A DNA stretch of 64,000 bases from Guillardia theta CCMP2712 (lineage: Eukaryota > Protista > Cryptophyta), in NCBI RefSeq assembly GCF_000315625.1, contig NW_005434545.1, positions 120,786-184,785 of the forward strand. The letters run 5' to 3'. A model generated the notes under the pieces. It saw only the letters and a program-made list of their open reading frames with translations. It was not told the origin of the DNA and did not search any database. Positions 30,380 through 42,338 of the stretch are shown piece by piece (the first letter of the stretch is position 1; every line of letters starts with the position of its first letter). Position numbers and translations under genes: made by a program.

Positions 30380-33375
30380 TCACTTCCCCGTCTTGCTCTT
30401 GCCAAGGCGACTGACACCGAAGGGCATAGCTGGAGCTGCCTTGGGTTTGCTAGTGGAGCTGCTCTTCTTAATAGCGTTGATCTTTTCCATGAAGTTTCCC
30501 TTGGGGGCAGAGTCGGACTGGCAAGTGAGGTCAGCAAGGCGTACTTGCACTGGGGAGTGCAAACTGTTTACCTTGTTGATCAGCTTGTTCTTCACGGAGA
30601 AAAGATTCGACAAGTTAGACTTGTTGTCCTTGATGGGACGCCCCGTCGGGGTCTCTGCTTTGGAGCGCGAGCTTGGGCTCGGATCAACAAACCGTCGAGG
30701 CTCATTGTGAACCTCTTCAGGTTCCTCGTCCATCTGGTCTCTAGTCGGCGAAGCAGGTTCAGAATGCTCTTCTACCGGGGCTTCCTCCATCAGCATCATC
30801 GGCTCTTCTTCCTCAACCTCAAGCTCCTGGAATCTCACTTGTCGATATTCGTCCATGATCTCAGCAAGGTTGGGAAGTCTATGGCGGTTTGCAAGCGTGA
30901 TGGCTGCTTCGAGCGCTTTCTCGCTAGAAATCTGTTTCGCCAAGTCCAGAGCTTTGGCCAATTTGCGCTACACAACATTGCTTTAGAACCAGAAAGAAAG
31001 CGTATGAAATGAAGTACCTGCTCGCATGCTGCGTTGATGAGTTGAATCAACTTCTTGTCCAACTCCAACTTCATCACATCAATGTCGTCGTCGTCACCTC
31101 CGGATTGAGAAGCTTGAAAATTGACGAAGATGCTGCCTCTCAACCATGGTTCCTCCAAGTCATGGCCCGGAAGGATCGGCATCTTTAAGTCATACTTGAC
31201 TAGCACTGGCTGGGGCACGTCTGGGTACCTTTGGAACACGCGTCATCAAGGAATAATTGCATTTTTGCAATACCTCTTCTCAATCTTGCATACGACACCG
31301 AGCAAATTAGAGTCCGTGATCCGAATAGGCCAGAACCAGTCACGTTGATGCTTGTTGCAAGTCTTGATGTCCAACATCGGGATCCATTGCCCCGAGAATT
31401 CTGCATGACTGTACACCATTACCATGCCTTCTGAATCCATTATCGCTACCATGCCTGTCTCTGTTACCTGATGGATTTCATAAATTGAGGTGCATTAGAA
31501 AACGATTGAGTTTCACCTGCAACCATTCCAATTTTGATCCAGGAGACAAACACACTGGTCCGCGTGCGACTGTCGTCTTCGTACTGATATTCATGAGGAG
31601 GAATTGCAATTCTTGATCTCCAGACAGTGAAGGAGACGAAGGTGTATGATAGATAAAGCATAGGAAGTCATTGCAGCCGTGCATACAGAGTGCAGGTCCT
31701 GGGAACATCACTGTCATCAACTGGACACAACTAGTGCTGAAGATTCGCAAAATCCGTTTTGAAGTGGCAGCAGCTACCCAAGATTCGCTCGTTGCGACGG
31801 CCATAATCTCCTCATTCTCAGGCATGGTTGTTGTCCAATCTGACTGGGATGCCCACGAATCGAAGGGGCGATATGATAAAGTGCTCAAATTCAGATCTCC
31901 ATTCCTTTCTCTGACCTACGACCAGACAAAGATCAGATTGGTTTTCAGCTTGCAAAATATTAAATACCTGAGGACTTGCAAATACAGCCCCTGAAGCGTC
32001 CATTGCGGCCATCGTGAATCCTGTGAAATCGTTGAACCTGATTGGACGATGAGTGTTGATATCTGCAAATTCGATTTCGATAGCGTTGTATGTCGATTCG
32101 TTGCGACTTGTGATATGCCCAACAGTGGTGTAGGTGAGAAATCTTCTCTTCAATTCAACTGGCGTCGACTACCACAGGTGAGTTGCGTTTTCAAGTGCAA
32201 GGATCAAGTACCTGAGGCTGAAAGGAAGCTTGAGGAATCGGGCGACTTATAGACACTGACTGCACGTTGGATTGTTTATATGCAGATGGGTCTGCTTGAT
32301 CCAAGTCCAGCGCATCTTCATCTAAATCACCAACTGAATCGACATCTGCTTGGTCACTATCTACTCTGTCATTTGGACCAATTTTGTCGCTTGGAATAAC
32401 ACCATCAACGAGTCCGTATGTTCCTTCAACAGATATCAAAGCAATACTGTTCGAAAAAGGGTCCCATCTTGCAGACAGAATCTTTGATGAGTTCTCGTAC
32501 CTGCCGCACACAGTGAGCACAACAAGCAACAACACATGAATGCACCTCTTGATGGACTCTCTTGAGCTGATATCCCATATCACAATGACACCGGAGGTAT
32601 CGACAGACAGCAAATAAAGCCCGTTGGAGCTGAATGCAAGATCGGTGACATTTTGCAAATGTCCACCAACGCACGATTCTGCCTCTTTCCAGTCTTCCCG
32701 CTCAAAGATCTTGATGTCGCGAGAACCTGCAACTGCAAAGATTGATCCATCGGGGGACCATGCTACTCTGCACAGGTTGGCAGGGACACCATCCTTGATG
32801 GAAGATGCAGCATCCTTTTCCAGGACTTGGCTGATTTTGTGCTTCTCTGTTCCAGACTCAACATCCCAGATACGGAGGCTGCGATCGGATCCAGTGGAGA
32901 GCAAGAATTCGTTCTTTGGATCAAAGCTCACAGACTTGACACCACCTTCATGCCCCTGCAAAGTCTTGAATTCTTCAACATTGTTGACGTTGACGATTTT
33001 GATCTCAGAGTCATCAGAAGCGATAGCAAGGAATGAACTGTCCTGGCTGAAAGCCAGATCCCGGATTGGAAGGGAGCAACGAGTGACGTTCCGTTCAAAA
33101 TCTGCATCCTCCATTCTGAACAACGCCACAAGGCTCTCTTCTCCACCAGCTGCAACACTCTGTCCGTTGGGACTGACGGCCACAACATGCACTGGGCCAT
33201 GAAAATGGTCAATCTCCTCCACATCATTGCCTTCGTCCCCGTACTTCTCCAGGTCGTGGATCTTCACAAGGCAGTCACTTCCGCAAGTCACAAGTTTCCT
33301 GTCCTTGATCCCGGGGGCGAATTGCATGGAGCAAAACCCCTCCAGGTGAGCATTTCTCGTTGTCAGCCTTTTCAT
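30380..33375 (-). CDS. WDHD1: WDHD1/And-1/Ctf4 replisome hub protein
   Basis: N-terminal WD40 (RNAHLEGFCS, LVTCGSD, TRCSLPIRDLAFS); SepB domain KRRFLTYTTVGHITSR...IEIEFAD; LSYRPFDSWASQSDW; WIPMLD...FWPI; helical C-terminus AITLANRHRLPNLAE. Confidence 0.9.
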
Positions 33376-34208
33376 CTGACGGGGGCCTCCGACCTGCAAA
33401 ACAACAAGATCCATCAATATTTCGGTACCAACTAGGCACTGACACGATTGTTACTTGTCTACAATCATAGTAGACATCCTCGACATCTTCGCTCCTGATA
33501 CATGCTCACGATCAAGATGAATCCATACTTTCATTTCTATCACAGCATGCTGAATGTTGGCACTGGTCGATCAACCATATTTCTTGGACACTCTTGAATC
33601 ACTGACAATCTCCTGCCTGATAACCTCCTGATCCTGTTCCATTGCCTCCCACCATTCCTCCCTCCATCTTCATCCCTGGCTCCCTCGCCTGCATTGCCCT
33701 CCCCTCGCCCTTCATTTCCCGCCTTTTCTTCCGATGACAACCCCTACGCTACAGTCCCAGAGACCACCCCACCATTCCAATATGACAAGTACCCCTCCTT
33801 CAGACCACCCCATCGAAAGCCTTCTAAAATACCCCCATCATCTTGGAAACGTTACATTACGTTTCAATAAAATTTAACGGTTGTAACGTTGAATGCCCCT
33901 TCGGTATTATCATGGCGATGGTGGGATAGAGCAAGGGAGCAGGGGGAGGTACAGGTAGATAATGGTGAAGGCAGTTGGCAGGCAGGAAGATAGGGATACA
34001 GACAGGAAGATAGGCAGATAGAAGATTAAGGTACAGGGCTTACTTTGACAGCATCATAGATTGTTGGTATTGATGAAAGCATGTATTCACAACTCATCGT
34101 GCGGAAGTCAGATGGCAATGGAGACAGAATAGCAGAATATGGGCATTATTGATCGAAATCTTGACTGAAGGTTAAAAGGATTCTTGTTTAACATTCAAGC
34201 AGGTGACC

Positions 34209-36697: not shown

Positions 36698-39111
36698 ATG
36701 GCCAGGAGTTCGAACCATAAGAATACAGGTAAAATCATCCGCAAGCTCAATCAAAACAAATCTTGCAACAGTTTCGAAAGTCAACTCTATACCAATCTTG
36801 CGCCTATCACAGTCGAGATGTTGAGATTTCAAAGATTAAATCCGATTGAAGATCTTGTGTTTATCAATACAAAAGTGTATCGGGTTTCCTGGAACAACAT
36901 TTTCGTCGCGGAGAGATCGGCGAGTCAACTCAAAGGCATTTCTGAAGAAATCAAAACGTACAGCATCAATTGCGAATTTCAGTTCGATCTCTATTTTCGA
37001 ATCTTACCGATTACCCCAACCATGAGTTTGAGAGGAATTTTGGAATGCGTACTGGACTTTGACGATGCTTCGGAAGAAGCCAGCTCGCTCGTCATCGCCT
37101 TACACACATACGGTAGAGAGGAGGACGAGGATGCCAGAAAGCAGCTAGAGCGTCTTGTTCTGATGGAAAATGATCTTGTACATTTTGAATTCACTGAATG
37201 TACCTCAAGTATTGTACAGAAGCTCTGGCAACTTGAAACTGCTTTGTCGCTCAGGCAACAAATGTGGCCACCGGACCAGGCTGAAAGCAGCAACACCAGG
37301 CTGGTGGCGATGGGCGTGATAGTCGGAGGAAGCAAGACGGTCTTCGTCGACAACGCCATTCATATTGCTAAGCAATGGCAGCTCGCCAAGGAGGCAAACA
37401 TCTTACTAGCTCAGTGCGGAGTACCAATCTTCCTGTGTCATGCAGAGCCTCAGACTGTCTATGGCATGTTCAATGACGTGAGAACGAGCCTCAAGGTATG
37501 ACGTCTCTAATTCTCGACATCGATGACTCGCCCCTTTAAAGGAACTTCGAGACGAAATCGTTCAAACGGTTGAGAAACACATGGTATGTGGAGCACGGTC
37601 ACCGGGTGTTAGTAGCGGAGGCTCGAGTCTCACTGAGGGATTGACCGTAACAATGCGGCAGGAGCCTGTCAGAAAGGATGTGCACGAGCTCGAGAGCAAA
37701 ATGGATACGGGGCTGTCGGTCAGTGGGAATTTGATCAAGCTTGAAGACAGTCATAGAGGAGCTAACGAATGTGCAGGAGGTCAAGAATGAGGTGCAGCAG
37801 CTGAAGGGAAGCCTGCACGAGCTCGAGAGCAAAATGGATACGGGGTTGTCGGTGGGCCCAGTCACTGATCTTGACACATAGAGGAGCTAACGAATGTGCA
37901 GGAGCTCGAGAGCAAAATGGATACGGGGCTGTCGGTCAGTGGGAATTTGATCAAGCTTGAAGACAGTCATAGAGGAGCTAACGAATGTGCAGGAGGTCAA
38001 GAATGAGGTGCAGCAGCTCAAGGGAAGCCTGCACGAGCTCGAGAGCAAAATGGAAACGGGGTTGTCGGTGGGCCCAGTCACTGATCTTGACACATAGAGG
38101 AGCTAACGAATGTGCAGGAGCTCGAGAGCAAAATGGATACGAGGCTGTCGGTGGGCCCAGTCACTGATCTTGACACATAGAGGAGCTAACGAATGTGCAG
38201 GAGGTCGAGAGCAAAATGGATACGAGGCTGTCGGTGGGCCCAGTCACTGATCTTGACACATAGAGGAGCTAACGAATGTGCAGGAGGTCGAGAGCAAAAT
38301 GGATACGAGGCTGTCGGTGGGCCCAGTCACTGATCTTGACACATAGAGGAGCTAACGAATGTGCAGGAGGTCGAGAGCAAAATGGATACGAGGCTGTCGG
38401 TGGGCCCAGTCACTGATCTTGACACATAGAGGAGCTAACGAATGTGCAGGAGGTCGAGAGCAAAATGGATACGAGGCTGTCGGTGGGCCCAGTCACTGAT
38501 CTTGACACATAGAGGAGCTAACGAATGTGCAGGAGGTCGAGAGCAAAATGGATACGAGGCTGTCGGTGGGCCCAGTCACTGATCTTGACACATAGAGGAG
38601 CTAACGAATGTGCAGGAGGTCGAGAGCAAAATGGATACGAGGCTGTCGGTGGGCCCAGTCACTGATCTTGACACATAGAGGAGCTAACGAATGTGCAGGA
38701 GGTCAAGAATGAGGTGCAGCAGCTCAAGGGAAGCCTGCACGAGCTCGAGAGCAAAATGGAAACGGGGTTGTCGGTGGGACCAGTCACTGATCTTGACTCA
38801 CATACTACCGAGGAGCCGCAGTAACGAATGTGCAGGAGGTCAAGAGCAAAATGGATACGGGGTTGTCGGTGGGCCCAGTCACTGATCTTGACACAGAGGA
38901 GCTAACGAATGTGCAGAAGGTCAAGGGTAGCATGCAGGAGCTTGCGCAGGATATGCGGCAGGTGGGTCAAGAGATGGCTGAAACTCAGTCCACTGAGTTG
39001 ATTCGTGAAAAGATGTTCCATCAAGCCCTTAGGGATATTTCGAATAGCAATTTCCCGGCGCAGCAGCAGCCTGACCGTGGCACGACTGTCGATGACGGCC
39101 GCGGCGCCTGA
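36698..39111 (+). CDS. Orphan protein: globular N-terminal domain plus long repetitive coiled-coil encoded by tandem mini-exons
   Basis: About 800-nt first exon, then phase-0 exons ELRDEIVQTVEKHM, EPVRKDVHELESKMDTGLS, repeated ELTNVQEVESKMDTRLS, and a terminal exon ending DDGRGA*. Confidence 0.55.
37686..38916 (+). repeat. Tandem array with 83-bp core period (51-nt exon-like + 32-nt intron-like), plus 93-nt exon and 40-nt intron variants; about 13 units
   Basis: Near-identical units start at 38100, 38183, 38266, 38349, 38432, 38515 and 38598. Longer variants at 37759, 37975 and 38681 carry the insert KNEVQQLKGSLHEL. Confidence 0.95.
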
Positions 39112-39377: not shown

Positions 39378-42338
39378 ATGGAGGAATATGCTAGGCTATG
39401 CAGCAAGAGGAGGGCGGGAGAGGAGAAGCTTGACGAGGGAGTTGTGGATGTGGGAAGGGAAAGAGGAAGAGAGGTCATCTCAGGTCCTCCCTCCTCCTCC
39501 TCCTCCTCCTCCTCCTCGTCTCAGCGTCAAGCTCCAGAGGTTCCCGCAGGAGGCGCCTGGTGGGACGCTGTTTGCCTCTTTGCACGCGGGCAGAGGCAGA
39601 AGGAGCTTTTCGAGTCTCTCGTCGAGTTCCGCAAGTTGAACGCCATGATACCGACCTTCAACAACTGCATGTACCTCGTCGTCGACATCGAGGACGGTGG
39701 CGCGGCCGGTCAGAAGTTCAGCGTCAACAAGTTCCTCAAGGAGTTGAATGAGAGGATGATGAGGGAGGGAGGGAAACACTTAGAAGAGTGCAAGGTGTCT
39801 TTCATCTACTCCAGCATCGAAGATCTGTGGATGGAAATGCATCCCTGGGGCGAGATGTTCGCTCCGTGCTCTCATCCTGTGCTCCCACACGTTCAGACCA
39901 GCACCATGGTCGACTTCAAGCTTTCTTCCATGTTGAGCCTCGCGGCCCACGGCAAGGCGGGGATCTACTTGGTGAGCGTCGGCAACGTCTATCTGCTCGA
40001 TCCCTTCAGCATCCCCTCGCGCTTGCAGCTCAGAGATCACAAGATGTTTGCGCTGGGCAGGCGTCAGGCAGCAGGGGCTGACGAGGCCCGAGGGGTCTTG
40101 ATCGCGAACGATGAGGCAGAGCGACAGGATGAGTCGATCGTAAGATGCAATCGTTACATGAGGAGAGGCGAGCAGGAGCAAGGGGACGCTGCTGCTGAGC
40201 AAGCTACTGCAGACGTAGGCGTCGTGCCCTCTGACCTCTACATCGAGCATGAGCTCTTCGTGCTTTTGGCGGAAACTCTAGAGCACAAACCATACAAGAG
40301 CCTGGTCGATGGCATTCTCGCCAGCGCCTTCTCGTGCAACCTGAGCATGGAGGAGGAGAACAAGGAGAACCTCGTCCACCTCGCCATCAGCTCGAACCGC
40401 GAGCTCTACATGCCGTGCGTCGTTGCCGGACCCTCTGAAACTGTGAGGTTGGGGAGGCGTCAAGCTGAGGCGGGAAAGACGAGCAGCGTGCTGGGATCTT
40501 ACGTGGACTCGAGCAGCAGCGTGGAAGGCTGCAGCATCTTGAACTCCTCCCTTCACTCTGTCACGGCGCAACCAGCGAGCCGGATCGAACTGTCGACGAT
40601 CATCCGGGCAGAGGGGCAGGAGGGATCGCATACCATAGGGAGGTCCTCGACCGTCAGTGGCGTCTTCTACAGTCATCCTACGACCCCGCTGGTCCTTCCA
40701 GAAGACGTCCGGCTGCTGTCGTTCCCGATCCTGAGTGAGGGAGGAGGAGTCAAGTTCCTCACAGCCTTCACCGGTGCTAGCGACGATCTCGAGGAAGCAC
40801 CTGTGCGCAGGTTCCTAAACCTGCCGGTAGAGGCGATCTGCGAGAGACAGGGCTCACTCCGAGAGCTTCTCGCCCCTCCTCATGACCTCCTCCATGCTCC
40901 GCTCTTTCCCCTCCACGAGGACCCCACCACCTCCGTGCTGCTGGCACTGCACGCCATCCATCAGCTGCTGGGCAACGAGCAGGACGCTTCCTTGTACGCC
41001 AGGGCGATCCCTCTTCCTCTGACGCCCCAGAAAGCCGACAGGACTTCCCTGCATGCGGCTCTTCCTCTGTTCTCGTCGCAGCAGTGCTACGTAAAGTTCG
41101 CTCCTCTCCCGGGCCCGTGCCTTCAGTCCGTCACCTTCCACAACTTGCACTCCTGCTGGTCGTTCCCAGCAAGGGGGGTGAGGCCAGCACAGGTCCAGCT
41201 GCCTGCGCGGCTCATCGTAGCGGGAGGATGGACGGATACGCCTCCTGTTTGCTTCATGCACCCGGGCGGGATCTTCAACCTCTCCTGCAGGCTTGACGGG
41301 CAAGACCCTCTGCAGGCGCGGGTGGAGGTGGTAGGAGGAGAGCGGCTGGAGCTCTGCTCGGAGGACCAGCAGGCGGAGGAGGGGTACGGCAGCTGGGAGG
41401 AGTTGTACGAGGGCATGAGGGCAGGAGGGCATGCGCTATCGCCCTGGAGGACGATGGGCCACGAGTCGTGCACCGCTGTGCATGCTGCTGTCATCTCCGT
41501 CCTCTTCGACTCGAACCTCTACGGCAGGATCAGCTCGCAGGCCTCCTCCTCCTCTCCCTCTCCCTTCCCTCGCGGCATTCGCCTCCTCACCAACTCTCTT
41601 CTCCCCAAGGGCAGCGGACTCGGCGGCTCCTCCATCCTCGCGCTCGCCTGCGTCCGCGCGCTTGAGGATGCGTGTGGGCTGGAGATGAGCCTGCGGCAGG
41701 AGATGGACGCAGTGCTCATGGTGGAACAGCTGCTGGGCACGGGAGGAGGGTGGCAGGACCAGATCGGCTGCGAGCCCGGAGCCAAGTTCACGACCCGGGA
41801 TCAGGGAGGATACCACGTGAGCAGAGTGAGCATGTCAGAGGAGCATGCTGCCCTCCTCAACTCGCGCCTCCTCTGCCTTGGGACCAGCATGACGAGAGTC
41901 GCCAAAACGGTGCTGGTTGGCGTCGTGGACAAGTTCTGCTCCGGCGACTTCAACATCGTCAGCATCCTCGGCAGGCAGCTCGAGCTCAATGCCAGGAGCA
42001 TGAGGGATAAGTTCCTCCGGTTCGCCGCCTGCTCCCTGAGGGAGGAGGAGGAGCTCGAAGCTTGCCTGCGCGACATCGGGGAGGAACTTGAGCGCTACCG
42101 CGAGCACTGCGAGGGCTTACAGGGCAGCACGTTCATGCCCGAGAGCCTCCGGCCGATCTTCGCAGCCATGGCAGGGTACACCTACGGGGCGAACCTGATG
42201 GGGGCAGGGAACGGAGGCTTCATCGTGGGTGTGGTCAAGGCGGGGAGGAACAAGGAGGAAGTTCTGCTCGCTTGCCAGCAGGTTGCAGTGACATGTGGCG
42301 TTTCGTTGACTCTGGCGAATGTGGAGGTGACAGTGTGA
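39378..42338 (+). CDS. L-fucokinase-like GHMP kinase, intronless, 986 aa
   Basis: PARLIVAGGWTDTPP, LPKGSGLGGSSIL, EQLLGTGGGWQDQIG and GAGNGGF are fucokinase/GHMP motifs. N-terminal half divergent. Confidence 0.85.
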   Translation: MEEYARLCSKRRAGEEKLDEGVVDVGRERGREVISGPPSSSSSSSSSSQRQAPEVPAGGAWWDAVCLFARGQRQKELFESLVEFRKLNAMIPTFNNCMYLVVDIEDGGAAGQKFSVNKFLKELNERMMREGGKHLEECKVSFIYSSIEDLWMEMHPWGEMFAPCSHPVLPHVQTSTMVDFKLSSMLSLAAHGKAGIYLVSVGNVYLLDPFSIPSRLQLRDHKMFALGRRQAAGADEARGVLIANDEAERQDESIVRCNRYMRRGEQEQGDAAAEQATADVGVVPSDLYIEHELFVLLAETLEHKPYKSLVDGILASAFSCNLSMEEENKENLVHLAISSNRELYMPCVVAGPSETVRLGRRQAEAGKTSSVLGSYVDSSSSVEGCSILNSSLHSVTAQPASRIELSTIIRAEGQEGSHTIGRSSTVSGVFYSHPTTPLVLPEDVRLLSFPILSEGGGVKFLTAFTGASDDLEEAPVRRFLNLPVEAICERQGSLRELLAPPHDLLHAPLFPLHEDPTTSVLLALHAIHQLLGNEQDASLYARAIPLPLTPQKADRTSLHAALPLFSSQQCYVKFAPLPGPCLQSVTFHNLHSCWSFPARGVRPAQVQLPARLIVAGGWTDTPPVCFMHPGGIFNLSCRLDGQDPLQARVEVVGGERLELCSEDQQAEEGYGSWEELYEGMRAGGHALSPWRTMGHESCTAVHAAVISVLFDSNLYGRISSQASSSSPSPFPRGIRLLTNSLLPKGSGLGGSSILALACVRALEDACGLEMSLRQEMDAVLMVEQLLGTGGGWQDQIGCEPGAKFTTRDQGGYHVSRVSMSEEHAALLNSRLLCLGTSMTRVAKTVLVGVVDKFCSGDFNIVSILGRQLELNARSMRDKFLRFAACSLREEEELEACLRDIGEELERYREHCEGLQGSTFMPESLRPIFAAMAGYTYGANLMGAGNGGFIVGVVKAGRNKEEVLLACQQVAVTCGVSLTLANVEVTV

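What the first reader, a model, noticed from the sequence alone, without database searches (positions are those of the whole stretch)
37686..38916. Tandem array whose unit is an exon plus a 32-nt intron: a coiled-coil built from repeated mini-exons
Unspliced, the 83-bp unit shifts frame and has stops. It splits into 51 nt (ELTNVQEVESKMDTRLS) plus GTGGGCCCAGTCACTGATCTTGACACATAGAG (32 nt, GT...AG, CTGAT/TTGAC branch-like words). Variant units obey the same rule: exons are 51 or 93 nt, intron-like parts are 32, 40 or 30 nt, all phase 0. Removing them links the upstream globular exon in frame to the terminal exon; the degenerate unit at 38774 needs the acceptor at 38835. The 32-nt introns are shorter than the 45-60 nt norm here. 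Phase-0 symmetric exons could be skipped or change copy number freely, giving a length-tunable coiled-coil (inference). Caveat: in-frame splicing needs the second or third AG of TAGAGGAG, not the first.
Basis: partly seen in the sequence, partly recalled or inferred. Interest (0 to 1): 0.8.

Follow-up and report, generated by a model that had tools for sequence, protein, structure and literature searches.

The report
Tandem mini-exon/intron cassettes, coiled-coil gene
In the alga Guillardia theta an 83-base tandem repeat is best read as a 33-base exon plus an ordinary 50-base intron, so each copy adds 11 amino acids to a helical stalk. Sister genes share the design and it resembles known cases such as chicken BG genes, but I found no RNA from this locus.

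Summary
The array is real: period 83 x 8.2 copies and period 216 x 2.2 copies, both 98% matching, with six units identical base for base. Unspliced, it has stops in all three frames. The boundaries do not.

The acceptor that works for all 13 units lies 18 nt further downstream, at GTGCAG, 11 nt after a CTAAC branch word. That gives 33- or 75-nt exons and 48-62-nt introns, close to the Guillardia theta intron mode of 47 nt. The "32-nt intron" and the "second or third AG" problem both disappear.

Support for the revised boundaries:
- An MMETSP transcript of the C29 paralogues splices its cassettes at the homologous exon start.
- Hydrophobic residues keep an unbroken 3/4 spacing across every junction.

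Sister genes carry their own cassette arrays with periods of 103, about 170 and about 231 nt. The head domain is a cryptophyte orphan with a weak likeness to the restriction-endonuclease fold. No RNA or protein record for this locus was found, so its splicing is inferred.

This is a new member of a known kind. The scan noted a similar exon-intron cassette array (EGF repeats) elsewhere in this genome.

The parts
36698..37495 (+). Exon 1: 266-aa head domain of an orphan cryptophyte family
   Evidence: Open frame. 86% identical to GUITHDRAFT_119157, dN/dS 0.48. AF2 pLDDT 82.
37496..37541 (+). Intron 1, 46 nt, GTATGA...AAAG
   Evidence: Same position as in the JGI model of C140 and in the MMETSP transcript P0002.
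37542..37583 (+). Exon 2, 42 nt, 14 aa
   Evidence: Homologous to exon 2 of P0001 and P0002.
37584..37661 (+). Intron 2, 78 nt
   Evidence: position shared with the paralogues.
37662..37718 (+). Exon 3, 57 nt, 19 aa, ends in the KMDTGLS motif
   Evidence: homologous exon in P0001.
37719..37776 (+). Array intron, 58 nt, GTCAGT donor, CTAAC, GTGCAG acceptor
37777..37851 (+). Cassette exon, 75 nt, 25 aa (two heptads plus one hendecad)
37852..37901 (+). Array intron, 50 nt, GTGGGC donor
37902..37934 (+). Mini-exon, 33 nt, 11 aa
37935..37992 (+). Array intron, 58 nt
37993..38067 (+). Cassette exon, 75 nt
38068..38117 (+). Array intron, 50 nt
38118..38200 (+). 83-nt cassette: mini-exon 38118-38150 plus intron 38151-38200
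   Evidence: 1 mismatch to the core units.
38201..38698 (+). Six identical 83-nt cassettes. Mini-exons (33 nt, EVESKMDTRLS) start at 38201, 38284, 38367, 38450, 38533 and 38616, each followed by a 50-nt intron.
   Evidence: 0 mismatches between the units.
38699..38773 (+). Cassette exon, 75 nt
38774..38835 (+). Degenerate array intron, 62 nt. Only the GTGCAG acceptor keeps the frame here.
38836..38868 (+). Mini-exon, 33 nt
38869..38916 (+). Last array intron, 48 nt (in frame and stop-free if retained)
38917..38961 (+). Exon 16, 45 nt, last coiled-coil exon
   Evidence: homologous exons in C13 and C140.
38962..39012 (+). Probable intron 16, 51 nt, GTGGGT...AAG, in frame and stop-free, so it could also be retained
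   Evidence: The homologous segments in C13 (41 nt) and C140 (76 nt) have diverged and hold stops, while the flanks are conserved. The RNA-verified C29 gene has an intron at this place.
39013..39111 (+). Terminal exon, 32 aa plus TGA. This tail is conserved across the family.
   Evidence: the homologous terminal exon is present in the MMETSP transcript P0002.

Best explanation
The array is the middle of a 17-exon, all-phase-0 gene of Guillardia theta that would encode 520 aa. Each repeat unit is a complete splicing cassette. It holds a 33-nt exon (11 aa) or its 75-nt parent (25 aa) followed by an ordinary 48-62-nt GT-AG intron, which carries a CTAAC branch word 11 nt before a GTGCAG acceptor. 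Unequal recombination or slippage between units has copied exon and intron together: a 216-nt super-unit twice, then the 83-nt unit about eight times, six of them still identical. Every exon is a whole number of codons and the 11-residue unit keeps the 4-4-3 hydrophobic spacing. So each copy gained, lost or skipped changes a continuous helical stalk by three turns without breaking frame or seam (inferred). The stalk joins a 266-aa orphan head domain, possibly of the restriction-endonuclease fold, to a short conserved tail. Shown: the repeat, the frames, the signals, the homology, and RNA-level splicing of the homologous cassettes in a paralogue. Inferred: splicing and translation at this locus, coiled-coil formation, and any length tuning.
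For: (1) One rule fits all 13 introns: each ends in AACGAATGTGCAG, is 48-62 nt long, and leaves exons of 57, 75, 33 or 45 nt, all multiples of 3.
(2) The G. theta intron mode is 47 nt (PMC6260743).
(3) No AG lies between CTAAC and the acceptor; the TAGAGGAG run lies upstream of the branch word.
The GTGCAG-type acceptor gives open, homologous exons in C13 and C140 and is the one used in the JGI model GUITHDRAFT_119157.
(5) RNA support from a paralogue: the MMETSP transcript P0002 matches the C29 copies (exon 1 with 1 mismatch, exons 2, 4 and 5 exact). It joins ...KMDEGFS directly to EHQKEIQ..., removing a 53-nt intron that holds an in-frame stop. That exon end and start match KMDTGLS and EVKNEVQ here.
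(6) Across all exon junctions the 56 successive gaps between ILMFVWY residues are only 3 or 4.
(7) The family's spliced C-terminal region hits coiled coils in the PDB and is one long helix in AF2 (residues 258-379 of P0002).
(8) Other paralogues have their own cassette arrays. C94 has a 42-nt exon plus a 61-nt intron, period 103, at least 5.6 copies. C71/C469 has 33- and 63-nt exons with 66- and 69-nt introns, up to six copies in the JGI model P0011.
(9) Exon 1 is intact, with dN/dS 0.48 against C140.
Against: No RNA-derived or annotated protein for this locus turned up. I made three word searches covering hit lengths of 51-562 aa, one whole-library search and two metagenome scans, so expression and the junctions themselves are unproven. 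The GTGGGC donor is weak-looking and I could not measure how common it is in this genome. Identical units are too young to show selection, so an open frame across them says little. The closest paralogue, C13, is a pseudogene. Copy number in a repeat from a draft assembly may be wrong.
Confidence: 0.7

Rival explanations
1. One reading: 51- or 93-nt exons and 30-40-nt introns that end at the second AG of TAGAG, giving a 17-residue repeat.
For: The arithmetic stays in frame in 12 of 13 units, and the 18 nt are stop-free there.
Against: It fails in the degenerate unit (stop) and in C140 (stop), and it shifts frame in C13. The introns would be far below the 47-nt mode. It needs a GAG acceptor behind an unused TAG, with the branch word about 15 nt from the donor. 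It puts three 3-residue spacings in a row into every repeat. The RNA-verified homologous exon in C29 starts at the other site.
Confidence: 0.05
2. The array is never translated. Either the locus is silent or decaying, or the first array intron is retained. In that case the frame stops at about 37790 and gives a protein of about 325 aa, like the short C140 paralogue. The 83-nt repeat would then be only a young minisatellite that grew out of old exon and intron sequence.
For: No transcript-derived or annotated protein was found for the locus, although one exists for the C29 paralogues. Read-through of the intron at 37719 gives a stop. C13 is already a pseudogene. Identical copies show no selection.
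Against: Exon 1 is intact and under moderate constraint. Every length difference inside exons is a multiple of 3 (42 nt), while the introns differ by -2, +8 and +12 nt. The terminal exons beyond the array are conserved and open. Sister genes with such arrays have spliced models or RNA.
Confidence: 0.17
3. Both acceptors, or variable subsets of cassettes, are used. The locus would then give a mixture of isoforms that differ by 18 nt or by whole 33-nt exons.
For: All cassettes carry identical signals and every exon is symmetric, so any donor-acceptor pairing stays in frame. Stochastic monomer number through repeated splice sites is described for human UBC (PMC10809524).
Against: There is no RNA. 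Short introns are normally removed one by one. The upstream AGs lie before the CTAAC word.
Confidence: 0.08

Closest known systems
Chicken BG (butyrophilin-like) genes: cytoplasmic tail built from 13-36 exons of 21 (or 24) nt, each encoding a heptad (PMC4046983)
   Same: A coiled-coil-type helix written as a run of tiny symmetric exons separated by short introns. Exon number differs between paralogues and changes protein length. Intron read-through can occur.
   Different: Here the exon is 33 nt (a hendecad) or 75 nt. The whole exon+intron unit is only 83 nt, and six copies are still identical. The organism is a cryptophyte alga, the head is a soluble orphan domain rather than an Ig receptor, and there is no cDNA proof.
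Sister genes of the same G. theta family: the C29 copies (MMETSP transcript P0002), C94, and C71/C469 (GUITHDRAFT_113956, _122835)
   Same: They share the head domain, the same first two introns and a stalk made of tandem phase-0 exon-intron cassettes. The cassette exon ends in the same K-M-D-x-G-x-S motif in C29.
   Different: Their unit sizes are 103, about 170 and about 231 nt with 1.5 to 6 copies. The window locus has the smallest unit (83 nt), the most cassette exons (12), and no public model that I could find.
Human polyubiquitin UBC: splice sites at every repeat boundary, with stochastic inclusion of monomers (PMC10809524)
   Same: A tandem repeat in which every unit carries splice signals, so splicing can change repeat number in frame.
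   Different: UBC repeats are whole 228-nt coding units with dual-use AGGT sites and no true intron in the unit. Here each unit holds a dedicated intron.
Lipoprotein(a) kringle IV-2 repeats and the spider Flag silk gene's exon-intron iterations (from my own knowledge, not checked here)
   Same: Exon and intron are duplicated and homogenised together. Copy number sets protein length.
   Different: Those units are kilobases long, not 83 nt.
EGF exon-intron cassette array elsewhere in this genome (scan note s1-430486, not checked by me)
   Same: Same genome; near-identical exon plus intron units form a repeat protein.
   Different: A 270-nt unit and a cysteine-rich extracellular repeat rather than a helical stalk.

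Membership tests
Ordinary short GT-AG spliceosomal intron of G. theta | GT at the 5' end and AG at the 3' end | tested here: met
   All 16 proposed introns.
Ordinary short GT-AG spliceosomal intron of G. theta | Length near the genome's short-intron mode (47 nt, PMC6260743) | tested here: met
The array introns are 48, 50, 58 and 62 nt with the GTGCAG acceptor.
Ordinary short GT-AG spliceosomal intron of G. theta | Branch word (CTRAY) shortly upstream of the acceptor, with no AG in between | tested here: met
   CTAAC ends 11 nt before the exon, and no AG lies between it and the CAG. TAAC is kept in the degenerate unit.
Ordinary short GT-AG spliceosomal intron of G. theta | Removal seen in RNA | tested here: inconclusive
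   No RNA for this locus. The homologous cassette intron of the C29 paralogue is removed in MMETSP transcript P0002.
Tandem symmetric exon-intron cassette array (as in chicken BG tails) | The repeat unit holds one whole exon and one whole intron | tested here: met
   83 = 33 + 50, 133 = 75 + 58, 137 = 75 + 62, 81 = 33 + 48. The boundaries are inferred from signals and paralogues.
Tandem symmetric exon-intron cassette array (as in chicken BG tails) | Exons are whole numbers of codons in the same phase, so units can be added or removed in frame | tested here: met
   All 17 exons are multiples of 3.
Tandem symmetric exon-intron cassette array (as in chicken BG tails) | Unit number varies between gene copies or individuals | tested here: met
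   Between paralogues: 0 (C140), 1 (C13), 2-3 (C29), at least 5 (C94), 1.5-6 (C71/C469) and 12 here. Variation between strains was not testable.
Coiled coil with heptad/hendecad periodicity | Hydrophobic residues spaced 3-4 (heptad) or 4-4-3 (hendecad) without breaks | tested here: met
   56 successive spacings are all 3 or 4, across every exon junction.
Coiled coil with heptad/hendecad periodicity | Long uninterrupted helix; likeness to known coiled coils | tested here: inconclusive
   Shown only for the paralogues' spliced region: PDB coiled-coil hits with E from 6e-4 and an AF2 helix at residues 258-379 of P0002 with pLDDT 58-75. I did not build the joined product of this locus.
Coiled coil with heptad/hendecad periodicity | Oligomerisation | not testable with these tools
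   Needs protein work.
PD-(D/E)XK (restriction-endonuclease-like) fold, for the head domain | Core fold similarity to solved members | tested here: inconclusive
   The model is good (pLDDT 82, pTM 0.84). Foldseek gave nothing at E<=0.001. The VIA-align top 30 hits are mostly nucleases of this fold (Can2, BglII, HamA, NucS, McrC, FokI, NucC), but Z is only 3.6-5.1.
PD-(D/E)XK (restriction-endonuclease-like) fold, for the head domain | Catalytic D ... (D/E)-x-K signature | tested here: not met
   Invariant residues are D97, H162, E164, T166, K175 and Q178. The third position is Thr, not Lys. A Lys sits on the next helix, so the strict motif is absent.

The most novel reading that the evidence does not exclude
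The 83-nt cassette array works as a length ruler that evolves fast and may also be tuned by splicing. On this reading, copy number differs between strains, occasional cassette skipping occurs, and together they give a ladder of stalk lengths. The steps would be 11 residues (about 1.6 nm) on a nuclease-like head. The cryptophyte-specific family would use independent cassette amplification in each paralogue to diversify reach or spacing, perhaps in a genome-conflict or defence role.
Probability: 0.2. Interest if true: 0.6.

Novelty: new member of a known kind. Interest (0 to 1): 0.4.

Why it matters
It corrects a tempting claim. There are no 32-nt introns here; the introns are normal for this genome.

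It also shows a clean, very small example of how a repeat protein can grow. An 83-nt minisatellite carries a complete exon and a complete intron, so repeat expansion, normally a frameshift hazard when the period is not a multiple of 3, becomes an in-frame way to lengthen a helical stalk.

The same trick arose several times in one cryptophyte gene family, with different unit sizes. That makes the family a natural system for studying concerted evolution of exon-intron cassettes and splicing of very short exons.

The locus seems to lack a public protein model, and the model of its C140 sister probably has a wrong 3' end. Both are useful for re-annotation.

Tried and rejected
RNA evidence for the locus. 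I ran three word-index protein searches, with exon 1 plus upstream frame, the last 110 aa of exon 1, and the terminal open frame. I also ran one whole-library HMMER search, one protein-pattern scan and one exact-DNA scan of metagenome contigs. All came back without a record of this locus.

Unsupervised intron census. I scanned the window for GT...AG segments flanked by open frames, hoping to get donor statistics. It gave 4224 candidates and no length peak, too noisy to use, so I dropped it.

Mobile intron ("introner"). The unit matches only the three closest family loci in the genome, so I rejected this.

Head-domain identity. Pfam gave no hit. The ESM Atlas features gave only 0.77 to serpins, which I treat as noise. 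Foldseek found nothing significant. The atlas fold library was unavailable.

Metagenome contigs. A contig carrying the C94-type protein is DNA, not RNA, and did not help.

Joined product. Exons were translated and compared one by one, and only their lengths were added up.

Full report
**What is there.** The window is scaffold C129 of an 87.1-Mb, 669-scaffold assembly. Three things identify it as the nuclear genome of Guillardia theta CCMP2712: the best protein hit is named GUITHDRAFT_119157, the assembly statistics match the published table (PMC6260743), and earlier notes of this scan say the same. Tandem Repeats Finder confirms the array, with period 83 over 38030-38708 (8.2 copies, 98%) and period 216 over 37678-38152 (2.2 copies, 98%). 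Six units (38201-38698) are identical base for base and the unit before them differs at one base. Read without splicing, three consecutive units have stops in all three frames.

**Where the exon really starts.** That acceptor, GTGCAG, is present in every unit. If it is used throughout, all 13 array introns end in the same 13 bases, measure 48, 50, 58 or 62 nt, and leave exons of 57, 75, 33 and 45 nt, all whole codons. The G. theta intron length mode is 47 nt (PMC6260743). The TAGAGGAG run lies upstream of it, which removes the "which AG" problem.

**Tests between the two parses.**
- The three close paralogues have homologous introns. The stretch equivalent to the 18 nt is 18, 19, 20 or 23 nt long, while the exon after it keeps its frame.
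The GTGCCAG acceptor gives the peptide used in the JGI model.
- In C13 the same acceptor gives open, homologous exons of 45, 75 and 66 nt with introns of 48, 51 and 41 nt.
- There is RNA evidence from a more distant paralogue. The library search found P0002, an MMETSP transcriptome protein. It matches the four C29 copies, with exon 1 showing one mismatch to L016 and exons 2, 4 and 5 exact. It joins ...KMDEGFS directly to EHQKEIQALK..., across a 53-nt GTGTGT...TGTAG intron that contains an in-frame stop. These exon ends correspond to ...KMDTGLS and EVKNEVQQLK... here, which is my parse.
- Adding up exon lengths only, the 56 successive gaps between large hydrophobic residues from exon 3 to exon 16 are all 3 or 4. 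They form heptad (4-3) and hendecad (4-4-3) patterns with no break at any junction.

**Gene model.** The gene has seventeen exons, all in phase 0, and a 520-codon coding sequence.
- Exon 1 (36698-37495) encodes a 266-aa head.
- Exons 2 and 3 are short.
- Twelve cassette exons follow, three of 75 nt and nine of 33 nt.
- Then come a 45-nt exon and a 99-nt terminal exon.

The 51-nt segment 38962-39012 is probably a further intron. Its counterparts in C13 and C140 have diverged, hold stops and are 41 and 76 nt long. The terminal peptide after them is conserved, and the RNA-verified C29 gene has an intron at the same place. In this locus the segment is in frame and stop-free and ends in AAG, so retention would also give a protein. 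The 33-nt exon is the 75-nt exon minus an internal 42 nt, that is, two heptads.

**How it likely arose and works.** A 216-nt super-unit was duplicated and then the 83-nt unit was amplified. Six perfect copies point to very recent unequal exchange or slippage, or to ongoing homogenisation. Because the unit carries donor, branch site and acceptor, a period of 83, which would otherwise shift the frame, adds exactly 11 residues per copy. Eleven residues with a 4-4-3 seam make about three helical turns. Taking the standard 0.15 nm rise per residue, each copy would lengthen a helix by about 1.6 nm, and the whole stalk of about 208 residues would be about 31 nm (inference from standard helix geometry). 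The stalk's helical, coiled-coil character is supported for the paralogues: profile hits to PDB coiled coils and one long AF2 helix at residues 258-379 of P0002.

**The family.**
- The head domain has at least 15 loci in the genome and a relative in Rhodomonas abbreviata. No Pfam family matches it.
- Cassette amplification has happened independently in the family. C94 has a 42-nt exon plus a 61-nt intron, period 103, at least 5.6 copies. C29 has 96-138-nt exons plus 53-nt introns in 2-3 copies, and its exons also vary by 21-nt heptad repeats. C71/C469 has a 33-nt and a 63-nt exon with 66- and 69-nt introns, giving one and a half to six copies in JGI models.
- C140 has no extra cassette. C13 has one, but its exon 1 carries a TAG and a deletion.
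- Exon 1 of the window gene is intact, with dN/dS 0.48 against C140.
- The head folds confidently (pLDDT 82, pTM 0.84). Foldseek finds nothing significant. The exhaustive aligner lists mostly restriction-endonuclease-fold nucleases, but at Z 5.1 or below. The invariant residues are D97, E164, T166, K175 and Q178, which do not form the strict D...(D/E)xK motif. I treat a nuclease-like fold as a lead only.

**What is missing.** I found no transcript-derived or annotated protein for this locus. The searches covered hit lengths of 51-562 aa, and a longer model would probably have appeared as its own representative. Splicing, translation and even expression of this copy are therefore inferred. The main rival is that the array is a young minisatellite in a silent or truncated gene: retaining the first array intron stops the frame near 37790.

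**Comparison and verdict.** Coiled coils written as runs of tiny symmetric exons are known. Chicken BG genes have 13-36 exons of 21 nt, one heptad each, with number varying between genes (PMC4046983). Repeat-borne splice sites that vary repeat number are described for UBC (PMC10809524). The scan has already noted an EGF exon-intron cassette array in this genome. This locus is therefore a new member of a known kind. It is notable for the very small unit (83 nt), the hendecad exon, the perfect copies, and the recurrence of the design across a cryptophyte-specific family. The intron-size anomaly that drove the high first score is not real.

Noticed in passing
L010 (G000:C140) minus strand, about 153200-153460 of the contig: The public model GUITHDRAFT_119157 (P0001) ends in VGQEMAIN by reading into a 76-nt GTGGGT...TGTAG intron. 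Splicing that intron gives a 31-aa tail that is conserved in the window gene and in C13, so the model's 3' end is probably wrong.
   Followed up: partly
L009 (G000:C13:40600-42050, minus strand): The closest-but-one paralogue is a pseudogene. Its exon 1 has an in-frame TAG and a short deletion, yet its 3' cassette exons and introns are still intact.
   Followed up: partly
L018:3177-3726 (G000:C94, upstream of the family gene): A 27-nt tandem repeat, 20.4 copies, 97% matches. Each unit holds GTGAGC and CTCAC words, and some units carry TAG. I did not study its nature; it could be a plain minisatellite or another exon-intron-like array.
   Followed up: no
G000:C29:520500-539200 (L014-L017): At least four near-identical family genes plus fragments lie within about 19 kb in both orientations, with an assembly gap. 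They differ in cassette number (2 or 3) and in the number of 21-nt heptad repeats inside exons. The MMETSP transcript P0002 looks like a mix or a fifth variant.
   Followed up: partly
window:36698-37495: The orphan 266-aa head domain folds confidently. Its nearest solved structures are almost all PD-(D/E)XK nucleases, at low Z (5.1 or below). Its invariant residues are D97, H162, E164, T166, K175 and Q178.
   Followed up: partly
window:39378-42338: The downstream neighbour is a 986-aa single open frame with fucose pyrophosphorylase and GHMP kinase domains, a bifunctional fucokinase/GDP-fucose pyrophosphorylase type. It has a (TCC)n serine run near its start, at 39485-39517.
   Followed up: no
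window:54000-58000: Composition is strongly skewed (GC skew 0.52, then a 26% GC stretch), with many purine- or pyrimidine-rich microsatellites (GAG, GGA, TCC, AGGATG).
   Followed up: no
window:35755-36563 (minus) and 32191-33417 (minus): The upstream neighbours are a protein kinase split by short introns, transcribed divergently about 130 nt from the array gene's start, and a WDHD1/Ctf4-type WD40 protein.
   Followed up: no
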